Positions 14,460 to 62,800 of a stretch of 64,000 bases of DNA are shown in pieces. This stretch comes from Macrostomum hystrix (Eukaryota; Animalia; Platyhelminthes). The stretch is taken from NCBI GenBank assembly GCA_950097015.1, contig CATNEN010000038.1:27528001-27592000 (forward strand), written 5' to 3'. Under the pieces are notes generated by a model. The model searched no databases. It was given only the letters and a program-made list of their open reading frames with translations, and was not told where the DNA came from. Within the stretch, counting starts at the first letter, position 1, and each line of letters opens with the position of its first letter. The translations under genes were made by a program, and so were the position numbers.

Positions 14460-17400
14460 TCACTTTGGATTCAATCGGCGCTCCTTATCGCCAACTTCGC
14501 ACAGCATTAACACCTTCTCCGGATTTAGGGGCAGGTCGAAAACCAGGTAGCGATCTGGCTTGCCCTCCTGCCGGCGGAAGGCCTCGATCGCACGCTTGAT
14601 GGCCGTCATACACACCGGGGCCAGACAGACTGGCGGCTCGCCGATGGCTCTGGTGTTCAGCAGGCCGCTCGGATTAGCCGACTTCTCAAGCAGGTGGACG
14701 CGGAAGTCGCGCGGAGTGTCAGCGGCTTGTGGTACCTGAGACGGGCATTGAAGTACGGGAGAGATGAGACACGGGAGAGATGAGACACGGGAGAGATGAG
14801 ACACGGGAGAGATGAGACACGGGAGAGATGAGACACGGGAGAGATGAGACACGGGAGAGATGAGACACGGGAGAGATAAGACACGGGAGAGATGAGACAC
14901 GGGAGAGATGAGACACGGGAGAGATACGACACGGGAGAGATAATACTCGGGAGAGATGAGACACGGGAGAGATGAGACACGGGAGAGATAAGACACGGGA
15001 GAGATGAGACACGGGAGAGATGAGACACGGGAGAGATACGACACGGGAGAGATGAGACACGGGAGAGATGATACACGGGAGAGATAATACTCGGGAGAGA
15101 TGAGACACGGGAGAGATGAGACACGGGAGAGATGAGACACGGGAGAGATGATACACGGGAGAGATAATACTCGGGAGAGATGAGACACGGGAGAGATGAG
15201 ACACGGGAGAGATACGACACGGGAGAGATGAGACACGGGAGAGATGAGACACGGGAGAGATGATACACGGGAGAGATAATACTCGGGAGAGATGAGACAC
15301 GGGAGAGATGAGACACGGGAGAGATGAGACACGGGAGAAATAAGACACGGGAGAGATGAGACACGGGAGAGATGAGACACGGGAGAGATGATACACGGGA
15401 GAGATGAGACACGGGAGAGATGAGACACGGGAGAGATGAGACACGGGAGAGATGAGACACGGGAGAGATGAGACGCGGGAGAGATGAGACGCGGTAGAGA
15501 TGAGATGAAGAGCGCCGATAAGCCCACCTTATAGTTCCAGGTGCCATCGCAGAGGTTCCTGCCGCTGTCCGGATCGTAGACGGTCCTCTCGGTGAGGCAG
15601 TAGCCCATGCCGAACACGAAGGCGCCCTCAATCTGGCCGATATCGACGCCCGGATTCAGCGACTTGCCAACGTCGACCATCAAGTCGACGCGGCGCATCT
15701 GATAGACGCCGGTGAGGACGTCGACTTCGGCCTCCGCCACGCAGATGCCGTTGGTGTAGTACTGGGCTCCTTTGCCATCATCGTTTCGCTGCAGGAAGCT
15801 GCTCAGAGTGTTAAATTGGAACTTTCGTTAAGCATAAAGATACGTTTTAAAAGTACATCAGGACTCGTTGAGTTATATTTTAAGTGCTTCATTGGATTGA
15901 AGTTACATTTTATATGCAAAGTAAAATCCTGAATTTTAGTGCTGGATAATTCAAGACAAAATTATCAACGCCAAGCCAATTGGCACAGCTAGAGACACAA
16001 AAAGCTTGCGCTCGATTCCGCGAGAACGTCACATTCATTTTTGGCGCAGCCGCGGAGAGAAGGCTTGGGGGCTTGTCGTGCAATTTACGCCCTTGAGGGC
16101 CAACCTCCAAGGCACAGCGAAAGTGTACACTGCCTGACAAAACGTGTATTCAAAACGAGCAGCATTGACTCCTCGCTGACTGTTGGTCTGATAATCATTT
16201 AATGAAAACATTTTAGAATTGTCTTAGAACTCGGGAGTACTCGCCTGCCAATGGCGGAGAGACTGGCGCCCATGTACACTGCCTTCTGCACGACCATCTG
16301 CCAGTTGTTGGCATTTTCCGGGTCAGCCTGTCGCACCGGGTCTAGACTGGCGTTCAGCTGCTTAGCAGCGTCCATGGCTGCCCTGCAGCACCACTCGCTG
16401 GCAATACTGCCACCGGTGACGTTGCCGTTCGGCGTCATCTGCGAGTCGGTCGGCTTCATCTTCACCAGGTTAATGTCGATGTTCAAAGCCGAGGCCACGG
16501 CTTGGGCGATCTTCACGGTGATGCCCTGGCCGATTTCGCTTGCGCTAAAGTACACGCTGACCGAGCCGTCTTGGAGGACGCTCAGCTTGACTACAGCCGG
16601 GCGGAAGTGATTGTAAGAGACGAAGTAGGACGCGGCCGACATGTCCAGACCGCGTTTGCGGTACCGGTTAGACTGGAAACAGAAGGTAGCTCCTATATTG
16701 ATACGTCCAACTTGAGTCGATTAAGAGTAGACCACGCTATCTTCCCCCTAGACAAGGACCACCAGGAATTTCACATACCCAATGCCTACTTCACGAAAAC
16801 TCTGCACTTTTTGGTTGTGGCAAAATTTTGCAATGACACCCCTACGAGAATCGTTGAATATGTCGATGATGCCGATGTTTTAAGATTTTGAAAATTGTTT
16901 CATCGGAAAATTTTAGCCCTTGATATGATTTTCATGGCGATCGGTTGAATATTTTGGGAGATACAAAAAATGTTGGCATTTGGTCTTTCTTCTGTTAATT
17001 GTGTTTAACTTATTGGTCTAAGTTAAAAATAATTTTTTAGAAATTATCGAATGACAGTCAATCAAACAAATACAAAATTTTAAAAGGAAAACTGTTTCAT
17101 CTGCCAAACTGTTTTGAAATCAATGACTTCTAGGAGTAAATAAAAGGACTAAAAACCACGTTTCTTAGAAAAAGTCTAGGTGGCAGATATTTAGATATTC
17201 GCATAAAGTTTTGATTATAGTTTTTATTGCATCAAAAGCCGAGCTGACCCACCTGACCTGTTACCCCGACGAGTTTTACAAAGCTTTGTTTCATAAATTG
17301 TTATCTTCAGATTTTTTTCTTTATTAAGCGCATATTAATAAATGGACTTGATCATCATATAATTGATTAAAACTAACGACTAGTTACGTGTAGACAGTCA

Positions 17401-36006: not shown

Positions 36007-39000
36007 ATGGAATTCACAAAGAACGAAAAACTAGCCGAAGGCAAGACTAAAATCATATTTTCTGTAAAAGACCAGCCTGGGCTGTGCATTATGCAAGCCA
36101 AAGAGCGCATCACTGCAAATAATGCTGCTAAAGTGAATGAACTAGCTGGAAAAGCTGCAGTTAGTACTCGGACAACAGCTATGGTATTCGAGTATCTGAA
36201 GCGAGCTGGCATCAGGTGATTTTTGTCTTGTCTTTTAAAATATCTCTCTTTGTTGGACAAGTAAAATATTATTATGTCATTCCGTCCTAAAGGTGCGCCT
36301 TCGAACGTTCTCTTGACGACATCTGCCTTCTGGCCCGTCGCTGCCATATGATTCCTATAGAATTCGTGTGTCGCCGTGTTGCTACCGGTTCGTTTCTGAA
36401 GCGAAACCCTGGTGTGCAAGAGGGCCACCGTTTTGTGCCAGTCAAGTCAGAGACCTTCTTTAAAGACGACGCTAATGACGATCCGCAGGTGTCTAAGGAG
36501 CAAATCGTTGCCATGAAGTTGCAGTGCGGTGAAAGGCTGGTGACTGGCAGCGATGTTGACATCCTGGAAGGCACCACTTGCGCTGTGTTTGAGATTCTGG
36601 AGCGTGCCTGGCACCATCTTGACTGCGCTCTTATCGATATGAAGGTGAGGCATCAGTTTGCTTGGGCTATTGGGTCCTTCAGGATCGAACTAGTATTGCA
36701 AAATCAGTTTTACTATTTGTTGTTGGCTGCATTGGTGAAGCTGAACCATGTCCAATATATGAATATTGTAAATGACAGGTTCAGTTATGGCAATAGATTG
36801 CTTCAGCCTAACAGTAATGCAGTTTGCAATGGTCGCTGTGCAGTTCTGCTAATAAAAATACTTGGTGAGTGTGCAGCATTACCCAGTAAACTGACAGTTT
36901 CATGTTAAATAGAATAAATAACTGGGCTGTGATGACAGAACACGGGCTCCCTCTTCTGACAGAATACAATTTCTGTGTGAAGACCCGTCCCGTGCTGCCT
37001 TCCTTCTGAGCCTGCAGATATCTTGTTTATAATCATGTTCAGTGCTATTTGTTCAGCACTGCTTGGTCATTTGATCATTTACTATGATTGTAGAATACTT
37101 ATAAATAATATGTTTTCAGTTCTTTTGACATGTTTGTTATTACTAGAGGGGCGTGAATTTCTTTGAGGAACATAACACTTACAGCAGTTATTAAGAAGAT
37201 CCAGCCATTATGTGATTTATTAGGGCACTTAACAATTGCATATGAAAAATAACGCGCTTAAGAAAAGCTACTTGTTAATTCTACAAAGGATTGTTTCTCA
37301 AATAACAAATGGCTGCATTGGTGAAGCTGGACCATGTCCAATAAATGAATATTGTAAATGACAGGTTTCAGTTATGGCAATAGATTGCTTCAGCCTAACA
37401 GGAATGCGATTTGCAATGGTCGCTGTGCAGTTCTGCTAATAAAAATGCTTGGTGAGTGTGCAGCATTACCCAGTAAACTGACAGTTTCATGTTAAATAGA
37501 ATAAATAAGTCCGTTTAGTGTTTGTGTTTTAGTTTACCCTGTTGCATAATTAATAATTATTAGTAGAGGTTGTAGCCTAGTGGTTAGGGCGTCGGACTCA
37601 CGACTTGAAGGTCGGGGGTTCGATTCCCGACTCCACTGGAACAATTTGCGTCCTTTAGCAAGACACTTAACTCTGCATTGCTTCAGTTCACCCAGCTGTT
37701 AAATGGGTACCAGCATCAGCTTGGATAATTGAAGGTGGGTGTGGCGTCCCCCCAGTCCGTGGACTGAACAGCTGTACGCAGCCTTCAGATGCGCCGCGCA
37801 TTAGCTGCGGCTGTGCTGTCGGCTGCACATCTGACCCAATTGGGGCAGGTGTAATAAATTATTATTAATTATTATTATAAAATTATTATAATTAATAAGC
37901 TGTTCATAGCCTTAAGAAGCACCACGCAATAGAATTCGCTGTGCCACTGTCTCAAAATTTATTAACTATCTATGCGTGTTTAGGAATTTAGTTCTCTAAG
38001 TCCTGATAAATTCAATGCGGCAATGACGACAGAACACGGGCTCCCTCTTCCGACGGATCTATAAAAATCCGTGTGAAGACCTGTCCCGTGCTGCCTTCCT
38101 TCTGAGCCACCAAAAGTTAAATTTTTAGCAACTGTTTATATTTATAAAATGTTTGATTTGTTCTTATGAGTAAGTTTTTTTCTCAGCTTAGCCACCTTTG
38201 AGTTAACTTCAACGTGGCTAAGGTGGGTATGTGGCAGCGAGCGAGGCCACATTTTTTGGGCGCTGACGCGGAGTGGGTTTGGGGGCTTGTCGTGCAATTT
38301 ACGCCCTTGAGGGCCAACCTTCAAGGCGCAGTGAGAGTGTACACTGCCTGACGATGAAAAAGTCAGGGCAGATGTACACACCTGTGTGAGCGAGTGCCTG
38401 CGTACGTTATCAGTGTGTTGTATGCTCAGGAGTCAGCGAAATGGACAGAATTGCCTCCTCGTTGGCTGCGGGTCTAGTGTAACAAAATTATAGTGCCAAT
38501 GCACTAAGCCCTCCTGCAAATACTCGTAATATTAATATTAATTAACGTGACAATGATGACAGAACACGGGCTCCCTCTTCCGACGGATCTATAAAAATCC
38601 GTGTGAAGACCTGTCCCGTGCTGCCTTCCTTCTGAGCCACTAAAAGTCTTGTATACTAATAACTTTTTGCCACCACCTCGGCCCTCTCCCATTTTTGTTT
38701 CAAATTCGGTCATTTATTCTCCCGCTTCCTTAATCCGGTCTTAGGTTGAATACGGCGTTGATGCCGAAACCGGCGAGCTTCTACTAGCTGACGTTATCGA
38801 CAGCGACTCGTGGCGTCTGTGGCCAGGCGGCGACAAGCGCCTGATGGTTGACAAGCAGGTCTACAGAGACATGGTCGAAGTTACGGACGATGGCCTGCGC
38901 GCTGTGCTGCGCAATTTCGAATGGGTGGCCGACAAATTGCCGGCCTTTTTAACGCCGGCGAAGGGCCGGGTGATCATTACCATGGGCTCGGCTACCGATG

Positions 39001-41102
39001 CGGACTATTGTAGAAGCATCGGAGCTGAACTGCGCAAACTTGGCGTTGAACAGGTGATTAAATTCTTCCCCATTTGAAGTTCAGATTTAACACAACAAGT
39101 GTTTCATTATTAGTGTGTCAAAAATTTCACGACTGGCTGCATTGGTGAAGCTGAACCATGTCCAATATATGAATTTTGTAAATGACAGGTTTCAGTTATG
39201 GCAATAGATTGCTTCAGCCTAACAGGAATGCAGTTTGCAATGGTCGCTGTGCAGTTCTGCTTATAATTGATGCTTGGTGAGTGTGCAGCATTACCCAGTA
39301 AACTGACAGTTTCATGTCGAATAGTCAAACACCTTAGTTGTGATGACGGAACGCAGGCTCCCTCTTCTAACATTTGAGTATCTGTGTAAAGCCTGATTTT
39401 TCAATTTGGCTGGTTTGGTGAAGCTGAGCAGTATCTTAATCAGAAGTGGCCTGTTCAGTTACAGCAATCCGTTTGCACCAGCCTAATATTGCTATCTGAT
39501 CAGTTTGAAATGGTCGCTGTGCAAATCGAATCTCTCTGTGACTGTGCGGCATTACCCAACAAACTAACAAATTTCCCAAATTCATAGAATTTTGATCCTC
39601 ATTGGCTGTGATGACAAGACACGGGCTCCCTCTTCTGACAGAAAGGTGTTTCTGCATGAAGACCTGTCCCGTGCTGCCTTCCTTCTGAGCCTATGTTTAT
39701 GAGGATTTAGAAAATCCCAGAATGCTAGCAACGTTGGTTGGTGACTGATTGGTTGACAGACTATGCGAGAGTGTTGTGTGGTTAAGCAGAGCCTTGTATT
39801 TGTTTTAGGCTTGATCAGTGAAATTGGGGAATTTCGCGTCTGGGTTTCTATTGTGACCTAGTTCCACCTGTTGTAGCCATTGTACCTCCAGCAGTCTGTC
39901 TGGATAAAGATAGGTGACAACCGAAGACGGAAATGATGCAGGCACATTCGGTAGACAGGCTGATAATTTTTGAAGGCCTTGAAGGCCGCACTGAGGCGCA
40001 CTGCTAATTTGTGTATAAAGTACACTAGCTGTAATGGAAAAATCTAACATTCGACCAGGACTATTGAATATCTCGACGATTTAAAAAGCTCGCGACTTGA
40101 TTATTGTTTAAGAAGATGCGCAACAAAAAGTTGGCTTGTATTGGAAATCCCCCTTGGTAGTTTTACTCTTATCCGCAAAATCTGGATTCCCAACCTAAAG
40201 CCTGTTATGGCCGAGTAGTTATAGCTTTGAATTTAACTGTATTAAATTGTGGTAGAAATTTAGATTTATTTGGAGCTAATAATAATAATAATTGCAGGAG
40301 GGCTGCAGGCAGTGGCACATCATTTAGTGACACCAGACCCGCAGCCAGTGAGGAGGCAATTCTGCCCATTTCGCTGACTCCTGAGCACACACGCACACAG
40401 ATACTGTACGCTGGCATACGCTCACACAGGTGTGTACATCTGCCCTGACTTTTTCATCGTCAGGCAGGGTGCACTTTCACTGTGCCTTGGAGGTTGGCCC
40501 TCAAGGGCGTAAATTGCACGACAAGCCCCCAAGCCTTCTCTCCGCGGCTGCGCCCCAAATAAATGTGGCCTCGCCGTGGAATCGAACTTAGGGACCGTGG
40601 TGCGAGAGGCAAACGCATTAACCGCTCTGCCCCCGACCCCCCATATGGAGCTAGGCTAGGCCAGATTTATATAGAGCACACTTTCAATTCCTGCCAGGTC
40701 GAAATTCGCGTCTGCTCGGCTCACAAAGCCACCAGATTCGCTCTGGAAGTCGGCGCCCTAGCCTCTGACCCGGCTCGCGGCCCGACTGTTGTCATCGCTG
40801 TAGCAGGCCGGTCCAACGGCCTCGGCCCGGTTCTCAGCGGCAACCTGTGCGCTCCTGTGATTAACGCTCCCCCGGTTACCGCTGATTGGGCTAACTGGGA
40901 TCTTGGCTCTTCGCTGCGTTTGCCATCCGGCCTGGGCTGCGTCACGGTGCTGGGCGCAGCTGCTGCCGCTCTGGCCGCCGCACAGTCGCTTGCCACGGGC
41001 GCTTCCGAGCACTCCATCTGGGCTAGGCTGAGAGCTAGTCAGCTAACTGGCTGGGTTAGGGTTCTGCGCGACGATGAACTGCTGCAGAGCAAGACCCATT
41101 GA
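36007..41102 (+). CDS. PAICS: bifunctional SAICAR synthetase / AIR carboxylase; exons 36007-36215, 36293-36644, 38745-39053, 40698-41102; 424 aa
   Basis: [99 protein letters not shown]; phases consistent. Confidence 0.96.
36724..36899 (+). ncRNA. putative H/ACA snoRNA, copy H1
   Basis: Hairpin-H box (ACAGTA)-hairpin-ACA+3 nt; stems GGCTG/CAGCC, GCTGAACC/GGTTCAGT, CAGTTTGC/GTAAACTG, GCTGTGCA/TGTGCAGC; four intronic sense-strand copies. Confidence 0.65.
36925..37012 (+). ncRNA. C/D box snoRNA, dual 18S guide (SNORD100-like + snR52/SNORD83-like), copy CD1
   Basis: Terminal stem GGCT/AGCC, C box GTGATGA, guide GGCTCCCTCT + D' CTGA, C' GTGAAGA, guide TGCTGCCTTCCTT + D CTGA; guides complementary to conserved 18S AGAGGGAGCC and AAGGAAGGCAGCA. 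Confidence 0.88.
37311..37486 (+). ncRNA. putative H/ACA snoRNA, copy H2
   Basis: Near-identical to H1; H box ACAGGA; 3' basal stem partly disrupted (CGATTTGC). Confidence 0.58.
37565..37870 (+). mobile_element. SINE family A, full length
   Basis: Nearly identical to the copy at 62345-62630. Confidence 0.9.
38017..38110 (+). ncRNA. C/D box snoRNA copy CD2
   Basis: C box variant ATGACGA, D' CCGA, both guides intact, D CTGA at 38102-38105. Confidence 0.78.
38240..38540 (+). mobile_element. SINE family B, 5'-truncated
   Basis: Similarity to the copy at 10329-10699; lies between snoRNA copies CD2 and CD3. Confidence 0.85.
38547..38640 (+). ncRNA. C/D box snoRNA copy CD3
   Basis: Canonical C box ATGATGA at 38553-38559, both guides intact, D CTGA at 38632-38635. 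Confidence 0.87.
39134..39311 (+). ncRNA. putative H/ACA snoRNA, copy H3
   Basis: Near-identical to H1; H box ACAGGA; ACA at 39306-39308. Confidence 0.65.
39336..39398 (+). ncRNA. shortened C/D snoRNA variant CD4 (first guide only; possible pseudogene)
   Basis: GTGATGA, GGCTCCCTCTT + degenerate D' CTAA, CTGA at 39393-39396; second guide missing. Confidence 0.5.
39407..39572 (+). ncRNA. divergent H/ACA-like paralog H4
   Basis: Keeps TTGGTGAAGCTGA, GTTCAGTTA, AATGGTCGCTGTGCA, ATTACCCA and terminal ACA; loops replaced; H box not evident. Confidence 0.5.
39604..39691 (+). ncRNA. C/D box snoRNA copy CD5
   Basis: GGCT/AGCC stem, GTGATGA, both guides, D' CTGA, C' ATGAAGA, D CTGA at 39685-39688. 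Confidence 0.87.
40278..40640 (-). mobile_element. SINE family B, full length
   Basis: Reverse complement of the SINE B consensus, including the tail. Confidence 0.9.
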
Positions 41103-41713: not shown

Positions 41714-44700
41714 ATGCCAACTGCTGATTCATCTAAGGAAGCGTCTTCCAACGCTACTAATAGTAGTAACTTATTAGACAGCAGTAATATAGTTGCCAAG
41801 GCTACTAAATGTGATTTCTGCTCACAATCTGGCGCCTCTGCGGATGCCGAAGCTCAGGCCTGCATCTTGCATTGGCTAGCACTGCTAATGCGCTCCTCCG
41901 ATGTCAACTGGACAACTAGCTCTGAATTGAAAGATAAATCTTTATCATTAAACGAATTAGCCGACGGAGTTGTGCTGTTAAATCTGGTTGGCCGAATTGA
42001 TCCTGACTGGCGTCCCAGCGACAATTACGAGCCGTTGGACTCGCCATTGCCTCGGTTCGCATTTTTAGAAGAATACTTAGACTCAGCATTCGGCGTTGCC
42101 AGATACGCTTTAGTTCGTGTCCTAGATTGGGATCGAATTGTTCTACCCGAAGCTGCTGTTGGTCAACGCGACTGGGAACTGCTGAAAGTGTGCGTCCTAC
42201 TGCTGGCTGCTTGGCTGCGACAGGCGCGCACCTTGGAGTTGGCGGCCGCCGCTGCTGACGCCCTCCCGGCTCATCTGCAGCCGCGCGCCGTAGCGTCTCT
42301 CCGGCCGCTGCTCAGCCTGCCAGAGGGTGCCAGTCTGAGCTGCGACCTGTTCCACTGCCTTTTGTCAACCGATTCTAATAGTGTCCAACTCAAAACTGAT
42401 GTCAATCAATCCATAGCCAAGGTAATTGTAACTCTCAAGGTGGCTTGCGGTTACTAATTAGCTAGAATGGGGAAGCTCGTAGCTCAGTTGTTAAAGCTTT
42501 GAACTTATGACCGGGAAGTTGAGAGTTCGAATCTCAGCTGGAAGGGAGAAAATTAATGTGTTTGAACACTACTCCCTTATGCCTCAGTTCACCCAGCTAT
42601 AGTTACAATTGGTACCAGCAAGAACTGGGATGAAACTGGCGATCTTTAAAGTCCACAGACTGAACAGTTGTACACAGATTTTTCAAATATTTAGAAGTGC
42701 CACTGGCTTTGCATGAGGTGTTCATAAGCCGCGGTAAGTGTACTTTTTTAAACAGGAATATAAGAAATATGAAAATAATTAATCTAGGAATTAAGCAAGG
42801 ACCACTAGGTATAGAAGAATGGAAAACTTCGTTTCGAAGAAAGTGTTTAATTGACAGGTTGATTTATGCCGAAAATGATTGATATATTTTCACTTGTTTA
42901 ACATTTAAAAGTGTTCGTTTTAATTGGGTCCAGATTCAAAGCTCTTCTTTTAGCTTATTTTACCAGTTTCAAAGACATAACTTGCCTAACACGTTGCTCT
43001 AACAACTTTTACAAAGCTATTTCAATAAAAAAAAGAAATCATTTTGTTTTTAATTTTCAAAATCCAGTCAAGTACAGTCGAAGCCGCCACTGCCGAACAT
43101 CTGGAGTCTCTGGAAACAGCAGCTAAAGCGGACAGCGGTCGCGACGCTGAGACAGCCGCCTACTGGCTGAATGTTCGCCTGCGCACTAGCGAAATGGCCC
43201 GCTTTCGTTTAGAGGCTCGCGTTGCAGATCTCGAATGCCAGGCTGCTCGTTACACAGATTCCACCGACGAACTGCGCGCCGCGCTGGAGGACGCCCAGGC
43301 AGACGCCAGACGATCGAAGCGTCGCGCCGTTGAGGCGGCTCGCGCTGCTGAAACTGCCACTGCAGAGATTCGTCGACGCAGCGAAGCCGAATTAGAGGCC
43401 TGCCGCGGTCGCCTGGCTGAGGCTGCTCATACAGCTGCGCATGCTGCGGCTAAGGCAGATAAACTGCAGGTCAGTGGGCCACGTCCGCAGGAGGGCTGCG
43501 AGCACTTGCACATTATTTCGAGACACTAGACCAGCAGCTAGCGAGGAAGAAATTCTGCCCGTTTCGCTGAATCCTGAGCACACACGCTCACACGGATACC
43601 ATACACATGGACTCTTCACAGTATCTTGGAAAGTTGACCCTCAAGGACCTTAACTGCACAGGCCCCCCTAAGCATTCACCCCTGAGTCTGCGCCTTAAGT
43701 TAATGTGGCCTCGCCGCGCAATCGAGTACAGGGAGGGACCTTAGCGCGAAAAGCAAATGCGTTTGACCGCTCAGCTACTCACCCCCTCCCAACTACAGAC
43801 CTTCAGATTTATTCTGATTTATCTTCTGCAGTTTAAAATGCAAAATAGGTTTTCTCCACAATTTCCTTTTTGAAATTCGAATTCCCAACGAAGTTAAATA
43901 AGAAGTGGACCTCGTTTTAAACTTCTTTTAGGCACCTACTGCACAATCTATTCTCAGTTTATGTAATTCTCTGTCCAGCTGTTTAATATGTTTCGCAAGC
44001 TTAAGTTTTTCGGGTCTGAAAGATAATATTGTACGCCTCAACTCTGGTCGCAGAATTGTAGTACATTATTTTTCGGCTAAATAGTATTTCTTTTTTTAAT
44101 TTTTAGGGTGAAGTCGACTCCCTTACAGTTCGTTATGAAGAGGCTATTCGGCTATTAAATCTAGCAAAGCAACGAGAAGCAGTCAATACAGAACAAATAA
44201 CCGAACTGCGTGAAGAATTATGCCATTGTCGATGCGGATCTAGAGCTCCCAATCGCTTAAACATCGGCGTGGAAGCTAACCTAGGCCCGCAATTGATTCA
44301 CCGCTCCGTTGAAGCTTGCTGCATTGAACTACCTAGGCCTCCTTGCCAGAATAAAAAAGTTCAGGTGCGTTCTTCTTGTGTCGACAAACAGTTCGGCGTT
44401 TGTCTTGATCCTCCTAAACCCGTCTGTGTCAGCAAAGAGGTTGAGGCCTGCCTTGAACCACCGAAGCCCGTCTGTGTCAACAAGCAGGTCGAAGTCTGCA
44501 TTGAACCACCAAAACCTGTCTGTTTCAACAAGCAGGTCGAAGTCTGCATTGAACCACCGAAACCTGTCTGTTTCAACAAGCAGGTCGAAGTCTGCATTGA
44601 ACCACCGAAACCTGTCTGTTTCAACAAGCAGGTCGAAGTCTGCATTGAACCACCAAAACCCGTTTGTTTAAACAAGCAGGTCGAAGTCTGCATTGAACCA

Positions 44701-46080
44701 CCAAAACCCGTTTGTTTAAACAAGCAGGTCGAAGTCTGCATTGAACCACCAAAACCCGTTTGTTTCAACAAGCAGGTCGAAGCCTGCATTGAACCACCAA
44801 AACCCGTTTGTTTCAACAAGCAGGTCGAAGCCTGCCTTGAACCACCAAAACCTGTCTGTGTCAACAAGGAGGTCGAAGCTTGCCTTGAACCGCCAAAACC
44901 CGTCTGTGTCCACAAGGAGGTCGAAGCTTGCCTTGAACCACCAAAACCCGTCTGTGTCAGCAAAAAATTTGGGGTGTGTGAAAAGCCATCAATAATGAAA
45001 ATACGCAGCAGTGAAGCTAGTGCTCAGACAAGCCTCGACTACTCCCTTAAGAGGGTTAGTTCTGGCGCTGTAGAGAGGGATGTTAAAGACGCTAGTGCTC
45101 AAGAAGGGCTCCTCACTTTCTCAGTAAACTCTCAATCGCAAGCACTACTAGAGATTGGTAAACAAGTTGAAGCGCGACTCGATCAAACTTTTAACCAACT
45201 CAGCGCTAGTGTTGCTAACAATGCTGAAAATGATGAGAAATTTTATGAAAACGACGGAACAGACGAAGATAATGATGAAGAGCTGCTATCCGAGCTCAAT
45301 CTTCGCCAACCTGAGTCGCTGTTAGCCGGCAGCAGAAGGCCTAGCGTCAACAACTTTGATCACGATTGTTCCTTTCGTGTGGGTGGAGCCCGCCGATTGT
45401 CAGCAGCCCCCACCGCTAGTGTGCCAGCGGAAATCGTGGACGACGACGAAGAACTGCAGCTGCCTATAACAACTTCGTCTCTGCTAGATGCTTTAACTCT
45501 TGAACGTTGCCAGCGTGAGCTAGACTTGGCAAAAGCGACTAATTCAGCTCTGGTAGCTCGCATCGATGATCTTTCCAATCAGCTAAGTTGCTCCCGTCTG
45601 CAGTATCAGCAGCTGGCCGCTGCAGCAGCTAATCGCCGCTGGTCGCCGGTGTTTCCTCGCCAACAACAGCAGCTTCATCAGCGTCGGCGATCCCATACTC
45701 GCACTAGTAATCAAAGCCGTCAGGACGAATTCGAAGATAGCAGCTTCCTTGACGACCAGCTGCCCATCATTGGCGGTGTGCCGACTCTGGCTGAAGAGGA
45801 GGCCGCCGCCTGGCGTGCTGCGGAACGACGACAGCGACTGGCGAAACGGCGTCGTGCCAGCCTGCACAACCTGGCTGCCTGGATGCATCCGCCGCAGCCC
45901 TCATCACCGGCTATACCGCCGCCTCCACCTCCACAGCCACTGCCTCCTACATCCGAGCATGAACAGTTGTCAGCCAATCGAATCGCGAGCTGGTTGGCCA
46001 CGCCTGGTCGTCGATTAAAGCGCATCGGAGCCGCTGGACGTCGCTTTCGGGCCTCGGTTGGCACATGGGATGTTTCTTAA
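41714..46080 (+). CDS. NuMA/Hook-like protein (N-terminal CH-like domain, coiled coil, Cys/Pro repeat); exons 41714-42421, 43068-43469, 44107-46080
   Basis: LNELADGVVLLNLVGRIDP and ELLKVCVLLL resemble the Hook/NuMA CH domain; Ala/Glu/Arg-rich coiled coil; phase-0 GT-AG joins; the family call is tentative. Confidence 0.72.
42468..42680 (+). mobile_element. diverged SINE related to family A
   Basis: GTAGCTCAGTTG, GAGTTCGAATCT, CAGTTCACCCAGCT, GACTGAACAGTTGTAC. Confidence 0.65.
43485..43790 (-). mobile_element. diverged SINE family B copy
   Basis: Reverse-complement similarity along the whole length. Confidence 0.8.
44401..44976 (+). repeat. coding 48-bp tandem repeat, 12 x C(I/L)EPPKPVC(F/V/L)NK(Q/E)VE(V/A)
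   Basis: In frame within the 44107-46080 exon; variation is largely synonymous or conservative. Confidence 0.93.
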
Positions 46081-59655: not shown

Positions 59656-59811
59656 TTTACTCATTTTTTCATAGTTGTCATTGGTATTGGTAATTCTTAA
59701 AACACTATAAAGTCTCACTGTCATTATTTGGATGAAAAAGTTATATTAGTGCAGTATATTTATATTTATATTTATTCATTCTTTTCAGCTGAAAGTCAGC
59801 ATCACTGGGGC

Positions 59812-62800
59812 ATGAGTCAGCAGCAGCAGCAAGACGGTCAAGTGACCATAGTTGATGCAATAAAGAATGTCAATCTACTGGACAATCTGGACGCTTCAGA
59901 CAGCGTTTACTCAATCGAAGCTGCTCCAATTCCAATCTTGTTAAAGTCAGACACAGATCGAAACTTTCAGGACCGCAACGCCTATGTTGTTGGCGTGGCC
60001 AAGTATCTCGAAGAGGCCACGGTGCACGCGGAGATGACCGACCTTTTAAAGGAGGGCGAAGAGTTCGCTGTCATGCTGTACACTTGGCGATCTTGTTCCA
60101 GAGCGTTGCCACAGATTCGGTCTAACGAACAGTCTAATAAAAATGAGATTCACGAGAAAACCATTGAAGTGTTGCAGGAATATGCCAATCGTCTGATGAG
60201 ATTCATGCTGTTTCACAACAAGGCAATCAGTCGCTTCTGCGAGGATGTCAAACGATTGTGCTTGAATACTAAGCGTCAGGAGTTTGTTAGCGAGGCTTAT
60301 CTACTGACGCTAGGCAAGATGTTGAATATGTTTGCTGTGCTAGACGAGCTTAAAAACATGAAAGCATCCATGAAAAACGATTATTCGCATTATAAGCGCG
60401 CGGCGCAGTTTCTCAGGCGCATGACCGACCCTGCCGTGTTGCATGACGCTCAAACTCTTACTATGTTTCTAGCCGAACAGAATAAGATTCGCAAGACTCT
60501 TAAAGATGAACTGCAAAAGATTGAAGGCTTTGAAGATCTATTCGCCGAAGTGATTAACACCGCCGTCATGATGTACGAGAACAGGCTCTTTCTCTATCCA
60601 AGCGAGAAACACTTGCTAGTGAAGGTGATCGGCTTCAGCATCTTCATCATCAACACTAATCCTAACATCAACATTTACAAGATGGACGCCAAGCGGCGCA
60701 TTTGCATAGCCAAGATTGACGCCATCTTCAAGCAGTGCGAAGTGGTCAATCTCTACGGCGATATGAGCATCTCCCCGTTTGACGCCTACGTCAGCAAGAG
60801 TCAGTTCTTCGACCCGTCCAAGTGGCCAGAGTGTCGCAATCCGCGCACCTCAACACAGGGTCAACTTTTCATGGCGCTGCCGCGTTTGAAGCAGCAGCAC
60901 GCCGAGCTGATGTCCGAACTGGCCACCCGGACTAATCTGTCAACCACTGTCCAGCAGCTAAACAAGGCCGACGCAGAAAATAGACGCACCTACGATCTGG
61001 CTTTGAAATCTTTGAGCTATCTTGGCAGCTGGAGTTTGCTAATTGTTGACGTGTTCACTTGGAAGCTGGCTCACCTCACAGACGTTCGACAGAATCCCGA
61101 CATGCCTAAAGAGGCGGAGGACTACGCCAAGGCCACGCAGTACAACTACAGTCGGGAGGAGCGTTTTGCCATTGTCGAAGTGATCGCAATGATCAAGTCG
61201 GTGCAAGCTATTCTATTGCGCATGGAGACAATCCTAATGGACAGTGTTAAGCGCGCCATATATTATCAGTTACAAGATTTTGTACAGCGTCAATTGCGCG
61301 AACCCTTGCGCAAGGCTGCCAAAAATAAGCGCGAAGTTGTGAAAAGTATCATAGTGTCGATCCGCACTATGGCAACGCATATGGCTCAGCTGGACTCGTC
61401 GGGAGGTCCCCAGCTATCTGAAGATTTCTCAGCGTCGCACAAGAAAAGTAGCAAAGGTGGCCCAACTGAGCCAGAGATACGCATCATGCAGCGCAATGTG
61501 CCTCCTAGTTCCACGCAGTTGTACATGGTTCGCACCATGCTGGAATCGCTTATCGATCGAAGCGGAGGTAAGCACACGCTGCGCAAGGATGTTGATCCGC
61601 AGTCTCTTGCCGCTATCGACCAGTTCCACCGGGACAGCTACTTCTGGCCCTATCTATTGAACTATTCGGACACACTGCAACAGTGCTGCGATCTAAGCCA
61701 GCTTTGGTATCGAGAATTCTTCCTGGAGATGACCAACGGTGCTCATATTCAATTCGACATTGACATGTCCCTGCCTTGGCTGCTAACTAAACAGCTGCTT
61801 GATTCTAAGGATCCAGCCTACATGGAGTACCTTTTGTATCCGTTAGACCTATACAATGATAGCGCATTCTACGCCCTCACCAGATTTAGGCGCCAATTTC
61901 TCTACGACGAAATTGAAGCCGAAGCTAATCTAGGCTTCGACCAGTTAGTGATCTGTCTTAGCAAGGACATCTTCGCTTACTACAAGACCCTGGCCGCCAG
62001 CATCTTGCTTGACAAAGGCTTCAGAACCGAATGCAATCAGAAAGGCATGCGAATACAATATCCTGCACCTTGTCGGTACGAGACCCTTATCAATCAGCGT
62101 CACGTTCAACTTCTCGGTCGGAGCATCGATTTAAATCGTCTAATTGGCCAGCGCGCTAACAAATCACTGTTAGCTAGCCTTCAGGTGGCTGTTCAATTGT
62201 TTGAGTCTAAGGATATCACTGGTGAGTTGCTGTCTCGGCAACTGAAGAGTCGGCTAGATCCACCACAATTTCAATTTTTCTTGTTTGAGATTAAAACCTA
62301 TCGACCTTCGAGACTTTTCGAGCCGTGTACAAAAATGTGAATCTAGAGGTTGTAGCCTAGTGGTTAGGGCGTCGGACTCACGACTTGAAGGTCGGGGGTT
62401 CGATTCCCGACTCCACTGGAACAATTTGCGTCCTTTAGCAAGACACTTAACTCTGCATTGCTTCAGTTCACCCAGCTGTTATCCCAGCATCAGCTGGGAT
62501 AATTGAAGGTGGGTGTGGCGTCCCCCCAGTCCATGGACTGAACAGCTGTACGCAGCCTTCAGATGCGCCGCGCATTAGCTGCGGCTGTGCTGTCGGCTGC
62601 ACATCTGACCCAATTGGGGCAGGTGTAATAAAAAATGTGGGTCAACAACCTCCTAGGTAGAGTGAGAGTGTAGACTGTATGGAAATTAAAGTCGGAACAT
62701 ATGTTTAGTTAGGCCTCCAGTTCCCAGTCTCGCAATTCTTAGTGTCAACGCTAGCTTAAGAGCTTTTAAGCATTGTCTTTCTCAAATTGCAGGCGTCATC

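What the first reader, a model, noticed from the sequence alone, without database searches (positions are those of the whole stretch)
36724..39691. Tandemly amplified polycistronic snoRNA cluster (H/ACA + C/D cassette) inside two PAICS introns
Seen: the order is H1-CD1-H2-[SINE A]-CD2-[SINE B]-CD3 in intron 2 and H3-CD4-H4-CD5 in intron 3. All copies are sense to the host, with only ~25-30 nt between an H copy and the next C/D copy in three places. Similarity drops sharply outside the RNA bodies. Known: vertebrate intronic snoRNAs are normally one per intron, and multi-snoRNA introns need endonucleolytic separation. Inference: an H/ACA-C/D cassette was duplicated within and across introns, tying rRNA-modification guides to a purine-synthesis gene that I do not recognise as a usual snoRNA host.
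Basis: partly seen in the sequence, partly recalled or inferred. Interest (0 to 1): 0.82.

Follow-up and report, generated by a model that had tools for sequence, protein, structure and literature searches.

The report
Flatworm PAICS introns carry snoRNA cluster
Two introns of the purine-synthesis gene PAICS in a Macrostomum flatworm carry repeated copies of two small guide RNAs: a methylation guide for two conserved 18S rRNA sites, and a likely pseudouridine guide whose target I could not find. The cluster is real but is an ordinary example of a known gene layout.

Summary
On the + strand, sense to a four-exon PAICS gene, intron 2 reads H1-CD1-H2-[SINE A]-CD2-[SINE B]-CD3 and intron 3 reads H3-CD4-H4-CD5.

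**C/D units.** These are convincing box C/D snoRNAs.
- They have C, D', C' and D boxes, a terminal stem, and an internal hairpin kept by compensatory changes.
- Two 13-bp guides match the genome's own 18S rRNA, placing methylation at G395 and A427. By the 32-nt spacing, these appear to equal human Gm436 (SNORD100) and Am468 (SNORD83).
- Four copies are intact. CD4 is a truncated relic.

**H units.** These have box H/ACA architecture, but no Rfam family matches, and no rRNA or snRNA target scores above chance. H4 is diverged and has a defective H box.

**Not a transposon.** Both unit types occur only at this locus in the 220-Mb genome. The two SINEs, by contrast, are dispersed in both orientations.

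The animal is a Macrostomum flatworm, not a vertebrate and not human. Several snoRNAs per intron is a layout already known from rice and Drosophila. Earlier notes of this scan, which I did not check, report many such arrays of other snoRNA families elsewhere in this genome.

**Not possible here.** Expression and related-species conservation could not be tested.

Verdict: real, a new member of a known kind, of modest interest.

The parts
36007..36215 (+). PAICS coding exon 1 (start ATG at 36007)
   Evidence: Pfam SAICAR_synt profile positions 1-61, E 3e-12. GT donor read.
36293..36644 (+). PAICS coding exon 2
   Evidence: Pfam SAICAR_synt 67-172, E 1e-22. AG acceptor and GT donor read.
36645..38744 (+). 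PAICS intron 2 (2100 nt), host of H1, CD1, H2, CD2 and CD3
   Evidence: GTGAGG donor and TTAG acceptor, phase 0.
36725..36899 (+). H1, an H/ACA-type unit of 175 nt. It has two hairpins, an H box ACAGUA in the hinge, and ACA at 36894-36896.
   Evidence: Fold -54.6 kcal/mol, z -2.47. Model R1 scores 221 bits. No Rfam hit beyond SNORA16 at 13.6 bits.
36924..37013 (+). CD1, an intact double-guide box C/D snoRNA (C UGAUGA, D' CUGA, C' UGAAGA, D CUGA, GGC/GCC terminal stem)
   Evidence: The D guide pairs 13 bp with 18S 423-435. The D' guide pairs with 18S 391-403.
37311..37486 (+). H2, 96% identical to H1. It has one mismatch in the lower stem of the 3' hairpin. It is followed by the 22-nt spacer but no C/D unit.
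37564..37900 (+). SINE A, a tRNA-derived dispersed repeat
   Evidence: tRNA model 31.8 bits. Copies elsewhere in the window lie on both strands.
38018..38109 (+). CD2, a C/D copy with variant C box UGACGA and D' box CCGA
38241..38540 (+). SINE B, a dispersed repeat. An inverted copy lies at 40277-40646 in intron 3.
38548..38639 (+). CD3, an intact C/D copy, 97% identical to CD2. It ends 105 nt before the 3' splice site.
38745..39053 (+). PAICS coding exon 3, which lies between the two snoRNA-bearing introns
   Evidence: Pfam SAICAR_synt 173-227. Single copy in the genome.
39054..40697 (+). PAICS intron 3 (1644 nt), host of H3, CD4, H4 and CD5
   Evidence: GTGATT donor and CCAG acceptor.
39135..39311 (+). 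H3, 95.5% identical to H1
39335..39400 (+). CD4, a truncated C/D relic. The C box and D' guide are kept (12 nt Watson-Crick to 18S). The D' box reads CUAA, and the D guide and D box are missing.
39408..39572 (+). H4, a diverged H copy (about 68% identity). Stems and pocket strands are conserved while loops and hinge are not. The hinge reads AUAUUG instead of ANANNA.
   Evidence: (147 bits).
39603..39692 (+). CD5, an intact C/D copy, 88% identical to CD1
40277..40646 (-). Inverted SINE B copy in intron 3. Together with 38241-38540 it forms an inverted pair around exon 3.
   Evidence: 86% identity over 299 nt, opposite strand.
40698..41102 (+). PAICS coding exon 4 (AIR carboxylase part, stop at 41100-41102)
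   Evidence: Pfam AIRC 30-142, E 6e-21.

Best explanation
This is a genuine intronic snoRNA gene cluster in the single-copy PAICS gene of a Macrostomum flatworm.

**C/D unit.** It is about 90 nt long, with four intact copies and one truncated relic. It is a double-guide box C/D snoRNA. The guide upstream of box D' pairs with 18S rRNA so that G395 is methylated. The guide upstream of box D pairs so that A427 is methylated. By their spacing, these appear to be the flatworm counterparts of human Gm436 (guided by SNORD100) and Am468 (SNORD83), here combined in one RNA.

**H unit.** It is about 175 nt long, with three near-identical copies and one diverged copy. It is most likely a lineage-specific box H/ACA snoRNA whose target is not identified.

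**Origin (inferred).** An ancestral H-spacer-C/D cassette, and later single units, were duplicated locally. The copies were then kept alike by selection and probably by gene conversion restricted to the RNA bodies.

**Expression (inferred, not shown).** The RNAs are released from the spliced PAICS introns. Because several snoRNPs sit on one intron, an endonucleolytic cut in the short spacers is needed before exonucleolytic trimming, as in the intronic gene clusters of rice and Drosophila.
For: **C/D units**
- The boxes, terminal stem and an internal D'-C' hairpin are present. The hairpin is 100% paired, and 2 of its 5 pairs show changes on both sides.
- The D guide pairs over 13 nt Watson-Crick with the genome's own 18S at 423-435, putting A427 at the fifth position. 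The D' guide pairs over 13 bp (2 G-U) with 391-403, putting G395 at the fifth position.
- The 32-nt spacing equals the spacing between human sites 436 and 468.
- The D guide plus D box is identical to the Rfam U83/U83B consensus.
- SNORD100 is predicted to guide G436 (PMC3412847). SNORD83A is predicted to guide 18S-468 (PMC4914119).
- The exact guide-plus-box strings occur nowhere else in the 220-Mb genome.

**H units**
- The fold is hairpin-hinge-hairpin-tail, with ACAGNA in the hinge and ACA at the aligned 3' end.
- The 3' pocket lies 16 nt from ACA.
- 96% of the proposed pairs are kept across the four copies.
- In the diverged H4, stems and pocket strands are conserved while loops are not.

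**Locus restriction.** BLAST and a covariance model find the units only here, all in sense orientation.

**Host gene.** PAICS was confirmed exon by exon and is single copy.

**Known layout.** PMC2780460 describes it. Unchecked scan notes report it elsewhere in this genome.
Against: - There are no expression data.
- No Rfam family reaches its gathering score: snoU83 29.5 against 50, snoU83B 24.7 against 35, SNORD100 18.3 against 58.
- The H unit has no rRNA or snRNA target better than shuffled controls.
- The H unit's 5' pocket lies about 24 nt from the H box instead of 14-16, and it contains an extra mini-hairpin.
- H4 lacks a consensus H box, H2 has a stem mismatch, and CD2 has a variant C box. 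Some copies may therefore be inactive.
- With only four sequences, covariation for H is weak (120 of 500 shuffles reach the observed score).
- Conservation in a second species could not be tested.
Confidence: 0.8

Rival explanations
1. Only one or two copies of each type are functional. The rest are recent, inert duplicates (snoRNA pseudogenes) that have not yet decayed.
For: - CD4 is clearly truncated.
- H4 has no ANANNA box, H2 has a lower-stem mismatch, and CD2 has C box UGACGA.
- Only CD3 lies near a 3' splice site (105 nt). The other units are far from one.
Against: - Four C/D copies keep both guides and all boxes intact, even though their internal hairpins have diverged with compensatory changes.
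- H4 keeps pockets and stems while its loops have diverged. Both patterns indicate purifying selection on more than one copy.
Confidence: 0.3
2. The H unit is not a pseudouridylation guide. It could be some other structured intronic RNA, or a non-functional repeat that merely folds like an H/ACA RNA.
For: - No Rfam H/ACA match.
- No target above chance.
- Non-canonical 5' pocket geometry.
- Modest fold z-scores of -2.5 and -1.7.
Against: - The architecture is canonical: hinge box ACAGNA, ACA at the aligned 3' end, and a 3' pocket 16 nt from ACA.
- The conservation pattern in H4 is selective.
- It always lies in sense orientation next to bona fide C/D snoRNAs and only at this locus.
Confidence: 0.15
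3. The H-spacer-C/D cassette acts as one composite RNA of about 290 nt, analogous to composite C/D-H/ACA scaRNAs, rather than as two separate snoRNAs.
For: Three cassettes keep a 23-30-nt spacer with a shared AUAGAAU-like motif.
Against: - H2 stands without a C/D partner, and CD2 and CD3 stand without an H partner.
- The C/D unit has its own terminal stem and rRNA (not snRNA) targets.
- No CAB box was seen in the terminal loops (my reading of the folds).
Confidence: 0.06
4. The units are a mobile element or SINE-like repeat, not genes.
For: Similarity stops sharply at the unit ends, as it does for retroposed copies.
Against: - Only these copies exist in the genome, all on one strand within 3 kb.
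- There are no target-site duplications or A-tails.
- The true SINEs in the same introns are dispersed in both orientations.
Confidence: 0.02

Closest known systems
SNORD83A/B (U83, Rfam RF01179 and RF00593), human RPL3 introns, sponge RPP0 introns
   Same: The 16-nt D guide plus D box (GCUGCCUUCCUUCUGA) is identical to the family consensus. The predicted target is the 18S adenosine equivalent to human A468 (PMC4914119).
   Different: - It scores below the gathering thresholds (29.5 against 50; 24.7 against 35).
- It carries a second, functional-looking D' guide.
- It has a different host gene (PAICS).
- It is present in several copies.
SNORD100 (HBII-429, RF00609), RPS12 intron from sponges to vertebrates
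   Same: The D' guide places methylation on the 18S guanosine that, by spacing, corresponds to human G436, the site assigned to SNORD100 (PMC3412847).
   Different: - Only 18.3 bits against a gathering score of 58.
- Here the guide shares one RNA with the SNORD83-type guide and lies in PAICS, not RPS12.
- No separate SNORD100-type guide string exists elsewhere in the genome.
Intronic gene clusters of snoRNAs (rice; Drosophila melanogaster, Huang et al. 2004/2005 as cited in PMC5932544 and PMC2780460)
   Same: Several sense-oriented snoRNAs, often paralogous isoforms, lie in one intron of a protein-coding host, which implies processing of a polycistronic intron.
   Different: - H/ACA and C/D units alternate here as a cassette. 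PMC5932544 says H/ACA units flanking C/D units are uncommon in Drosophila.
- The same cassette lies in two neighbouring introns.
- The organism is a flatworm.
Mixed C/D + H/ACA polycistronic clusters of plants and trypanosomatids
   Same: Both snoRNA classes are interleaved with short spacers and repeated (PMC2780460).
   Different: Most of those clusters are independent transcription units. This one is embedded in introns of a protein-coding gene.
SNORA16 (RF00190)
   Same: There is a weak resemblance in the upper 3' hairpin (GGUCGCUGU... / ...UGCAxCAUU), seen.
   Different: The score is 13.6 bits against a gathering score of 35 (E 1.5), which is not significant. The 5' hairpin is unrelated. 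I do not claim homology.

Membership tests
Box C/D snoRNA | C box (RUGAUGA) near the 5' end and D box (CUGA) near the 3' end, joined by a short terminal stem | tested here: met
   CD1, CD3 and CD5 have UGAUGA ... CUGA with a GGC/GCC stem. CD2 has UGACGA. CD4 lacks the D box.
Box C/D snoRNA | Antisense element of at least 10 nt ending next to D or D', with the target nucleotide at the fifth position | tested here: met
   13 bp to the genome's own 18S for each guide, giving G395 and A427.
Box C/D snoRNA | Stable RNA of about 70-100 nt bound by fibrillarin | not testable with these tools
SNORD83 (RF01179 / RF00593) | Score at or above the Rfam gathering threshold | tested here: not met
   26-29.5 bits against 50; 24.7 bits against 35.
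SNORD83 (RF01179 / RF00593) | D guide complementary to the 18S site equivalent to human A468 | tested here: met
   The guide is identical to the family consensus and pairs with 18S 423-435. The target assignment comes from PMC4914119.
SNORD100 (RF00609) | Score at or above the Rfam gathering threshold | tested here: not met
   16.8-18.3 bits against 58.
SNORD100 (RF00609) | Guide for the 18S guanosine equivalent to human G436 | tested here: met
   The D' guide puts G395 at the fifth position. G395 lies 32 nt before A427, matching the human 436/468 spacing (PMC3412847). No residue-by-residue alignment to human 18S was made.
Box H/ACA snoRNA | Hairpin-hinge-hairpin-tail fold with an H box (ANANNA) in the hinge | tested here: met
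   H1 has ACAGUA. H2 and H3 have ACAGGA, 2 nt after hairpin 1. H4 has AUAUUG, so this feature is not met in H4.
Box H/ACA snoRNA | ACA three nucleotides from the mature 3' end | tested here: inconclusive
   ACA is present at the aligned position right after hairpin 2 in all four copies. The mature 3' end is unknown.
Box H/ACA snoRNA | Pseudouridylation pocket 14-16 nt from the box, with bipartite complementarity to a target uridine | tested here: inconclusive
   - The 3' pocket lies 16 nt from ACA.
- Its best target is 18S U1028 (11 bp), which is no better than shuffled targets: 55-61% of shuffles do as well.
- The 5' pocket lies about 24 nt from the H box.
Intronic snoRNA gene cluster | Two or more snoRNA genes, sense to the host, within one spliceosomal intron | tested here: met
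   There are five units in intron 2 and four in intron 3. Intron borders were read from the sequence, and exons were confirmed by Pfam.
Transposon / SINE | Dispersed genomic copies in both orientations | tested here: not met
   The units are found only at this locus, by BLAST, by covariance model and by guide pattern.

The most novel reading that the evidence does not exclude
The H-spacer-C/D cassette might be a functional dicistronic module. In this reading, a lineage-specific orphan H/ACA RNA with a non-rRNA target or a non-guide role is obligatorily co-processed with the 18S double guide. The module would spread between introns as an RNA-defined unit, because copies begin exactly at the H 5' end and end exactly at the C/D 3' end. 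That would point to an RNA-mediated or processing-intermediate-templated way of duplicating snoRNA genes in Macrostomum.
Probability: 0.08. Interest if true: 0.6.

Novelty: new member of a known kind. Interest (0 to 1): 0.3.

Why it matters
- **Sole source.** The locus appears to be the only genomic source of guides for two conserved 18S methylations in this flatworm.
- **Guide recombination.** Two guide functions that sit in separate, long-conserved host genes elsewhere (SNORD100 in RPS12; SNORD83 in RPL3 or RPP0) have been merged into one RNA and moved to a metabolic gene. Such recombination of guide elements is already known from fungi (PMC2780460).
- **Genome pattern.** It adds one more case to a pattern that earlier notes of this scan report across this genome, in which snoRNAs are amplified as several copies per intron.
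- **Overall.** This is useful for annotation and for studying snoRNA gene turnover, but it is not a new mechanism.

Tried and rejected
1. **Rfam at gathering thresholds.** No snoRNA hit in the window, only two SINE tRNA heads. Permissive scans of H1 and H4 alone gave nothing significant: SNORA16 13.6 bits, mir-19 18.7 bits, snR61 16.2 bits.
2. **H/ACA target search.** I searched the genome's own 18S, 5.8S, 28S, U1, U2, U4, U5 and U6.
   - The best hits were 18S U1028, 18S U970-972 and 28S expansion-segment U2384.
   - None was better than shuffled targets.
   - The 28S hit fits the wobble-to-Watson-Crick differences between H1 and H4, but it violates the box-distance rule and lies in a variable segment. 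I do not adopt it.
3. **Retroposition.** No target-site duplications or A-tails.
4. **Other C/D snoRNAs in the gene.** No further antisense element of at least 11 nt followed by a D box.
5. **Extra genomic guide copy.** The C31 hit has no C box. The C1 hits form a 44-nt minisatellite with a mismatch.
6. **Other organisms.** Exact-pattern scans of metagenome and prokaryote genome collections were blank, as expected for animal RNAs.
7. **Related-species PAICS locus.**
   - The exon-4 protein search found no close relative within the allowed length range.
   - I did not use the large protein search because of its stated cost.
Full report
**What the window is.** The window is G000:C38:27528001-27592000 of a 220-Mb, 42-contig genome. 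It is not human and not a vertebrate. A long CYFIP open reading frame in the window (59809-62337) is 95% identical to a Macrostomum lignano protein, and the next-best hit is an M. lignano paralogue at 71%. This agrees with earlier notes of this scan that call the genome a Macrostomum flatworm. No contig was taken for human, so nothing was withheld on that ground.

**Host gene.** Reading the splice sites gives four coding exons on the + strand: 36007-36215, 36293-36644, 38745-39053 and 40698-41102.
- Pfam, run exon by exon, gives SAICAR_synt profile positions 1-61, 67-172 and 173-227, then AIRC 30-142. This is the bifunctional PAICS enzyme.
- Exon 3 is single copy in the genome.
- The two introns in question are coding intron 2 (36645-38744) and coding intron 3 (39054-40697).

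| Unit | Coordinates |
|---|---|
| H1 | 36725-36899 |
| CD1 | 36924-37013 |
| H2 | 37311-37486 |
| SINE A | 37564-37900 |
| CD2 | 38018-38109 |
| SINE B | 38241-38540 |
| CD3 | 38548-38639 |
| exon 3 | 38745-39053 |
| H3 | 39135-39311 |
| CD4 | about 39335-39400 |
| H4 | 39408-39572 |
| CD5 | 39603-39692 |

- H-to-C/D spacers are 24, 23 and 30 nt.
- Body identities are 95-97% for H1/H2/H3 and CD2/CD3, and 78-88% among the other C/D pairs. The 60-nt flanks are about 48% identical, which is the random level for these introns.
- The exceptions are the spacer after H and the C/D unit that follows it. These are shared among cassettes and carry an AUAGAAU-like motif.

**The C/D unit.** Each intact copy has a C box, a D' box (CUGA or CCGA), a C' box (UGAAGA), a D box (CUGA) and a 3-4-bp terminal stem. 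CD2 has the C-box variant UGACGA.
- A hairpin between D' and C' is 100% paired. Two of its five pairs changed on both sides between CD1/CD5 and CD2/CD3: A-U to G-C and A-U to U-A.
- The folds are more stable than shuffles, with z from -2.5 to -4.0.
- I took the genome's own 18S from the rDNA. The guide before box D pairs over 13 Watson-Crick base pairs with 18S 423-435, which puts A427 at the fifth position. The guide before D' pairs over 13 bp (two G-U) with 391-403, which puts G395 at the fifth position.
- The two sites are 32 nt apart, the same as human 18S sites 436 and 468.
- The D guide plus D box is letter-for-letter the Rfam U83/U83B consensus. That explains the sub-threshold hits to snoU83 (up to 29.5 bits, gathering 50), snoU83B, SNORD100 and snoZ13/snR52.
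- According to the literature, SNORD100 is predicted to guide Gm436 and sits in RPS12 from sponges to vertebrates (PMC3412847). SNORD83A is predicted to guide 18S-468 (PMC4914119).
- This flatworm RNA therefore unites two guide functions that are separate genes elsewhere. Another first-stage note on this window said the same, and I confirmed the pairing here.
- The exact guide-plus-box strings occur only in these four copies in the whole genome.
- CD4 keeps the C box and a 12-nt D' guide, but its D' box reads CUAA and its 3' half is missing. It is a relic.

**The H unit.** H1 folds into hairpin-hinge-hairpin-tail.
- ACAGUA (ACAGGA in H2 and H3) lies 2 nt after the first hairpin, and ACA lies directly after the second.
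- The internal loop of the 3' hairpin lies 16 nt from ACA.
- On the four-copy alignment, 96% of 132 pair cells are standard pairs, against 27-39% when partners are slid. With four sequences the covariation is weak: one pair changed on both sides, and 120 of 500 shuffles do as well.
- More telling is H4, which is only about 68% identical overall. It keeps the stems and both strands of both internal loops almost unchanged, while apical loops and hinge have diverged with indels.
- Arguments against a fully canonical guide:
  - No Rfam H/ACA family matches.
  - The 5' pocket is about 24 nt from the H box and contains a conserved GCAA/UUGC mini-hairpin.
  - H4 has AUAUUG in place of ANANNA.
  - H2 has a mismatch in the lower 3' stem.
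  - No rRNA or snRNA target is better than chance. I tested the genome's own 18S, 5.8S, 28S, U1, U2, U4, U5 and U6, and the best scores were reached by 33-65% of shuffled target sets.
- I therefore call H a probable lineage-specific, currently orphan, H/ACA snoRNA.

**Not a transposon.** BLAST with H1 and CD1 found the units only at this locus. So did a covariance model of H run over the genome (only the 150 best of about 46,000 first-look candidates were scored, so this is a floor) and the guide patterns. All copies are in the sense orientation. In contrast, SINE A and SINE B have many copies on both strands within the window alone. No target-site duplications or A-tails flank the units.

**How it most likely works.**
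- Shown: the sequence features, the guide-target pairing, the locus restriction and the intronic sense position.
- Inferred: the RNAs are made from excised PAICS introns. Five and four snoRNP-forming units share one intron each, so exonucleases alone would leave polycistronic intermediates, and a cut in the 23-30-nt spacers is needed. This is the accepted logic for the intronic gene clusters of rice and Drosophila (PMC2780460; reference list of PMC5932544).
- Also inferred: the pattern of copies suggests an ancestral H-spacer-C/D cassette, now present as H1-CD1, H3-CD4 and H4-CD5. Later duplications of single units followed (H2 with its spacer; CD2/CD3). Gene conversion or selection confined to the RNA bodies would explain the sharp identity boundaries.

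**Comparison and novelty.** The layout is a known kind. Mixed H/ACA-C/D neighbours are called uncommon in Drosophila (PMC5932544) but are usual in plant and trypanosomatid clusters (PMC2780460). Earlier notes of this scan, which I did not check except for the taxon, list many multi-copy intronic snoRNA arrays of other families elsewhere in this genome, in PABP, MO25, a zinc-finger gene, a LEM-domain gene and Prp8. Several snoRNAs per intron and a non-ribosomal host therefore seem to be the local rule. What is specific here:
- SNORD100-type and SNORD83-type guides are fused in one RNA.
- This locus is apparently the sole source of those guides.
- An orphan H/ACA partner accompanies them.
- The same cassette lies on both sides of one exon.

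**Limits.**
- There are no expression data.
- I did not use the large protein search because of its stated cost.
- Equivalence to human site numbers rests on spacing, guide identity and the cited papers, not on an alignment.

Noticed in passing
L011:2713-2875 (- strand of the locus, same strand as the rRNA genes; G000:C15 rDNA unit): A full-length U1 snRNA gene (151.7 bits) lies inside the intergenic spacer of the 11.6-kb rDNA repeat, so U1 appears to be co-amplified with the rRNA genes.
   Followed up: no
window 38241-38540 (+) and 40277-40646 (-): Two SINE B copies form an inverted pair (86% identity over about 300 nt) in introns 2 and 3. They bracket PAICS exon 3 and the H3-CD5 units. This geometry can favour back-splicing or exon skipping.
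   Followed up: partly
window 37566-37635 and 62346-62415: Two identical tRNA-like heads (31.8 bits) belong to SINE A copies. The second lies immediately after the CYFIP ORF.
   Followed up: partly
window 36924-37013 and the other intact C/D copies: The predicted folds pair the 5' part of the D' guide region (CACGGG) with CCCGUG just upstream of the D guide, and pair CUCUUC with the C' box region. This gives an unusually closed C/D RNA, with z down to -3.95.
   Followed up: no
window 39252-39263 (apex of H3's 3' hairpin; similar in H1 and H2): The 12-nt stretch CAGTTCTGCTTA in H3 is complementary to 28S (position 1371). The similar stretch in H1 gave the weak snR61/Z11 match. No D box follows it and it is absent from H4, so it is probably chance.
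   Followed up: partly
window 14460-15740 (-) and 44269-46080 (+): Long ORFs contain tandem peptide repeats: SLPCLISPVSHLSRVS-type repeats inside a molybdopterin-oxidase-like reading frame, and CIEPPKPVCFNKQVEV-type repeats in the gene downstream of PAICS.
   Followed up: no
G000:C1:26598968-26599497: A 44-nt-period minisatellite carries GCTGCCTTCCTCCTGA, one mismatch from the D guide plus D box. I did not examine it further.
   Followed up: no
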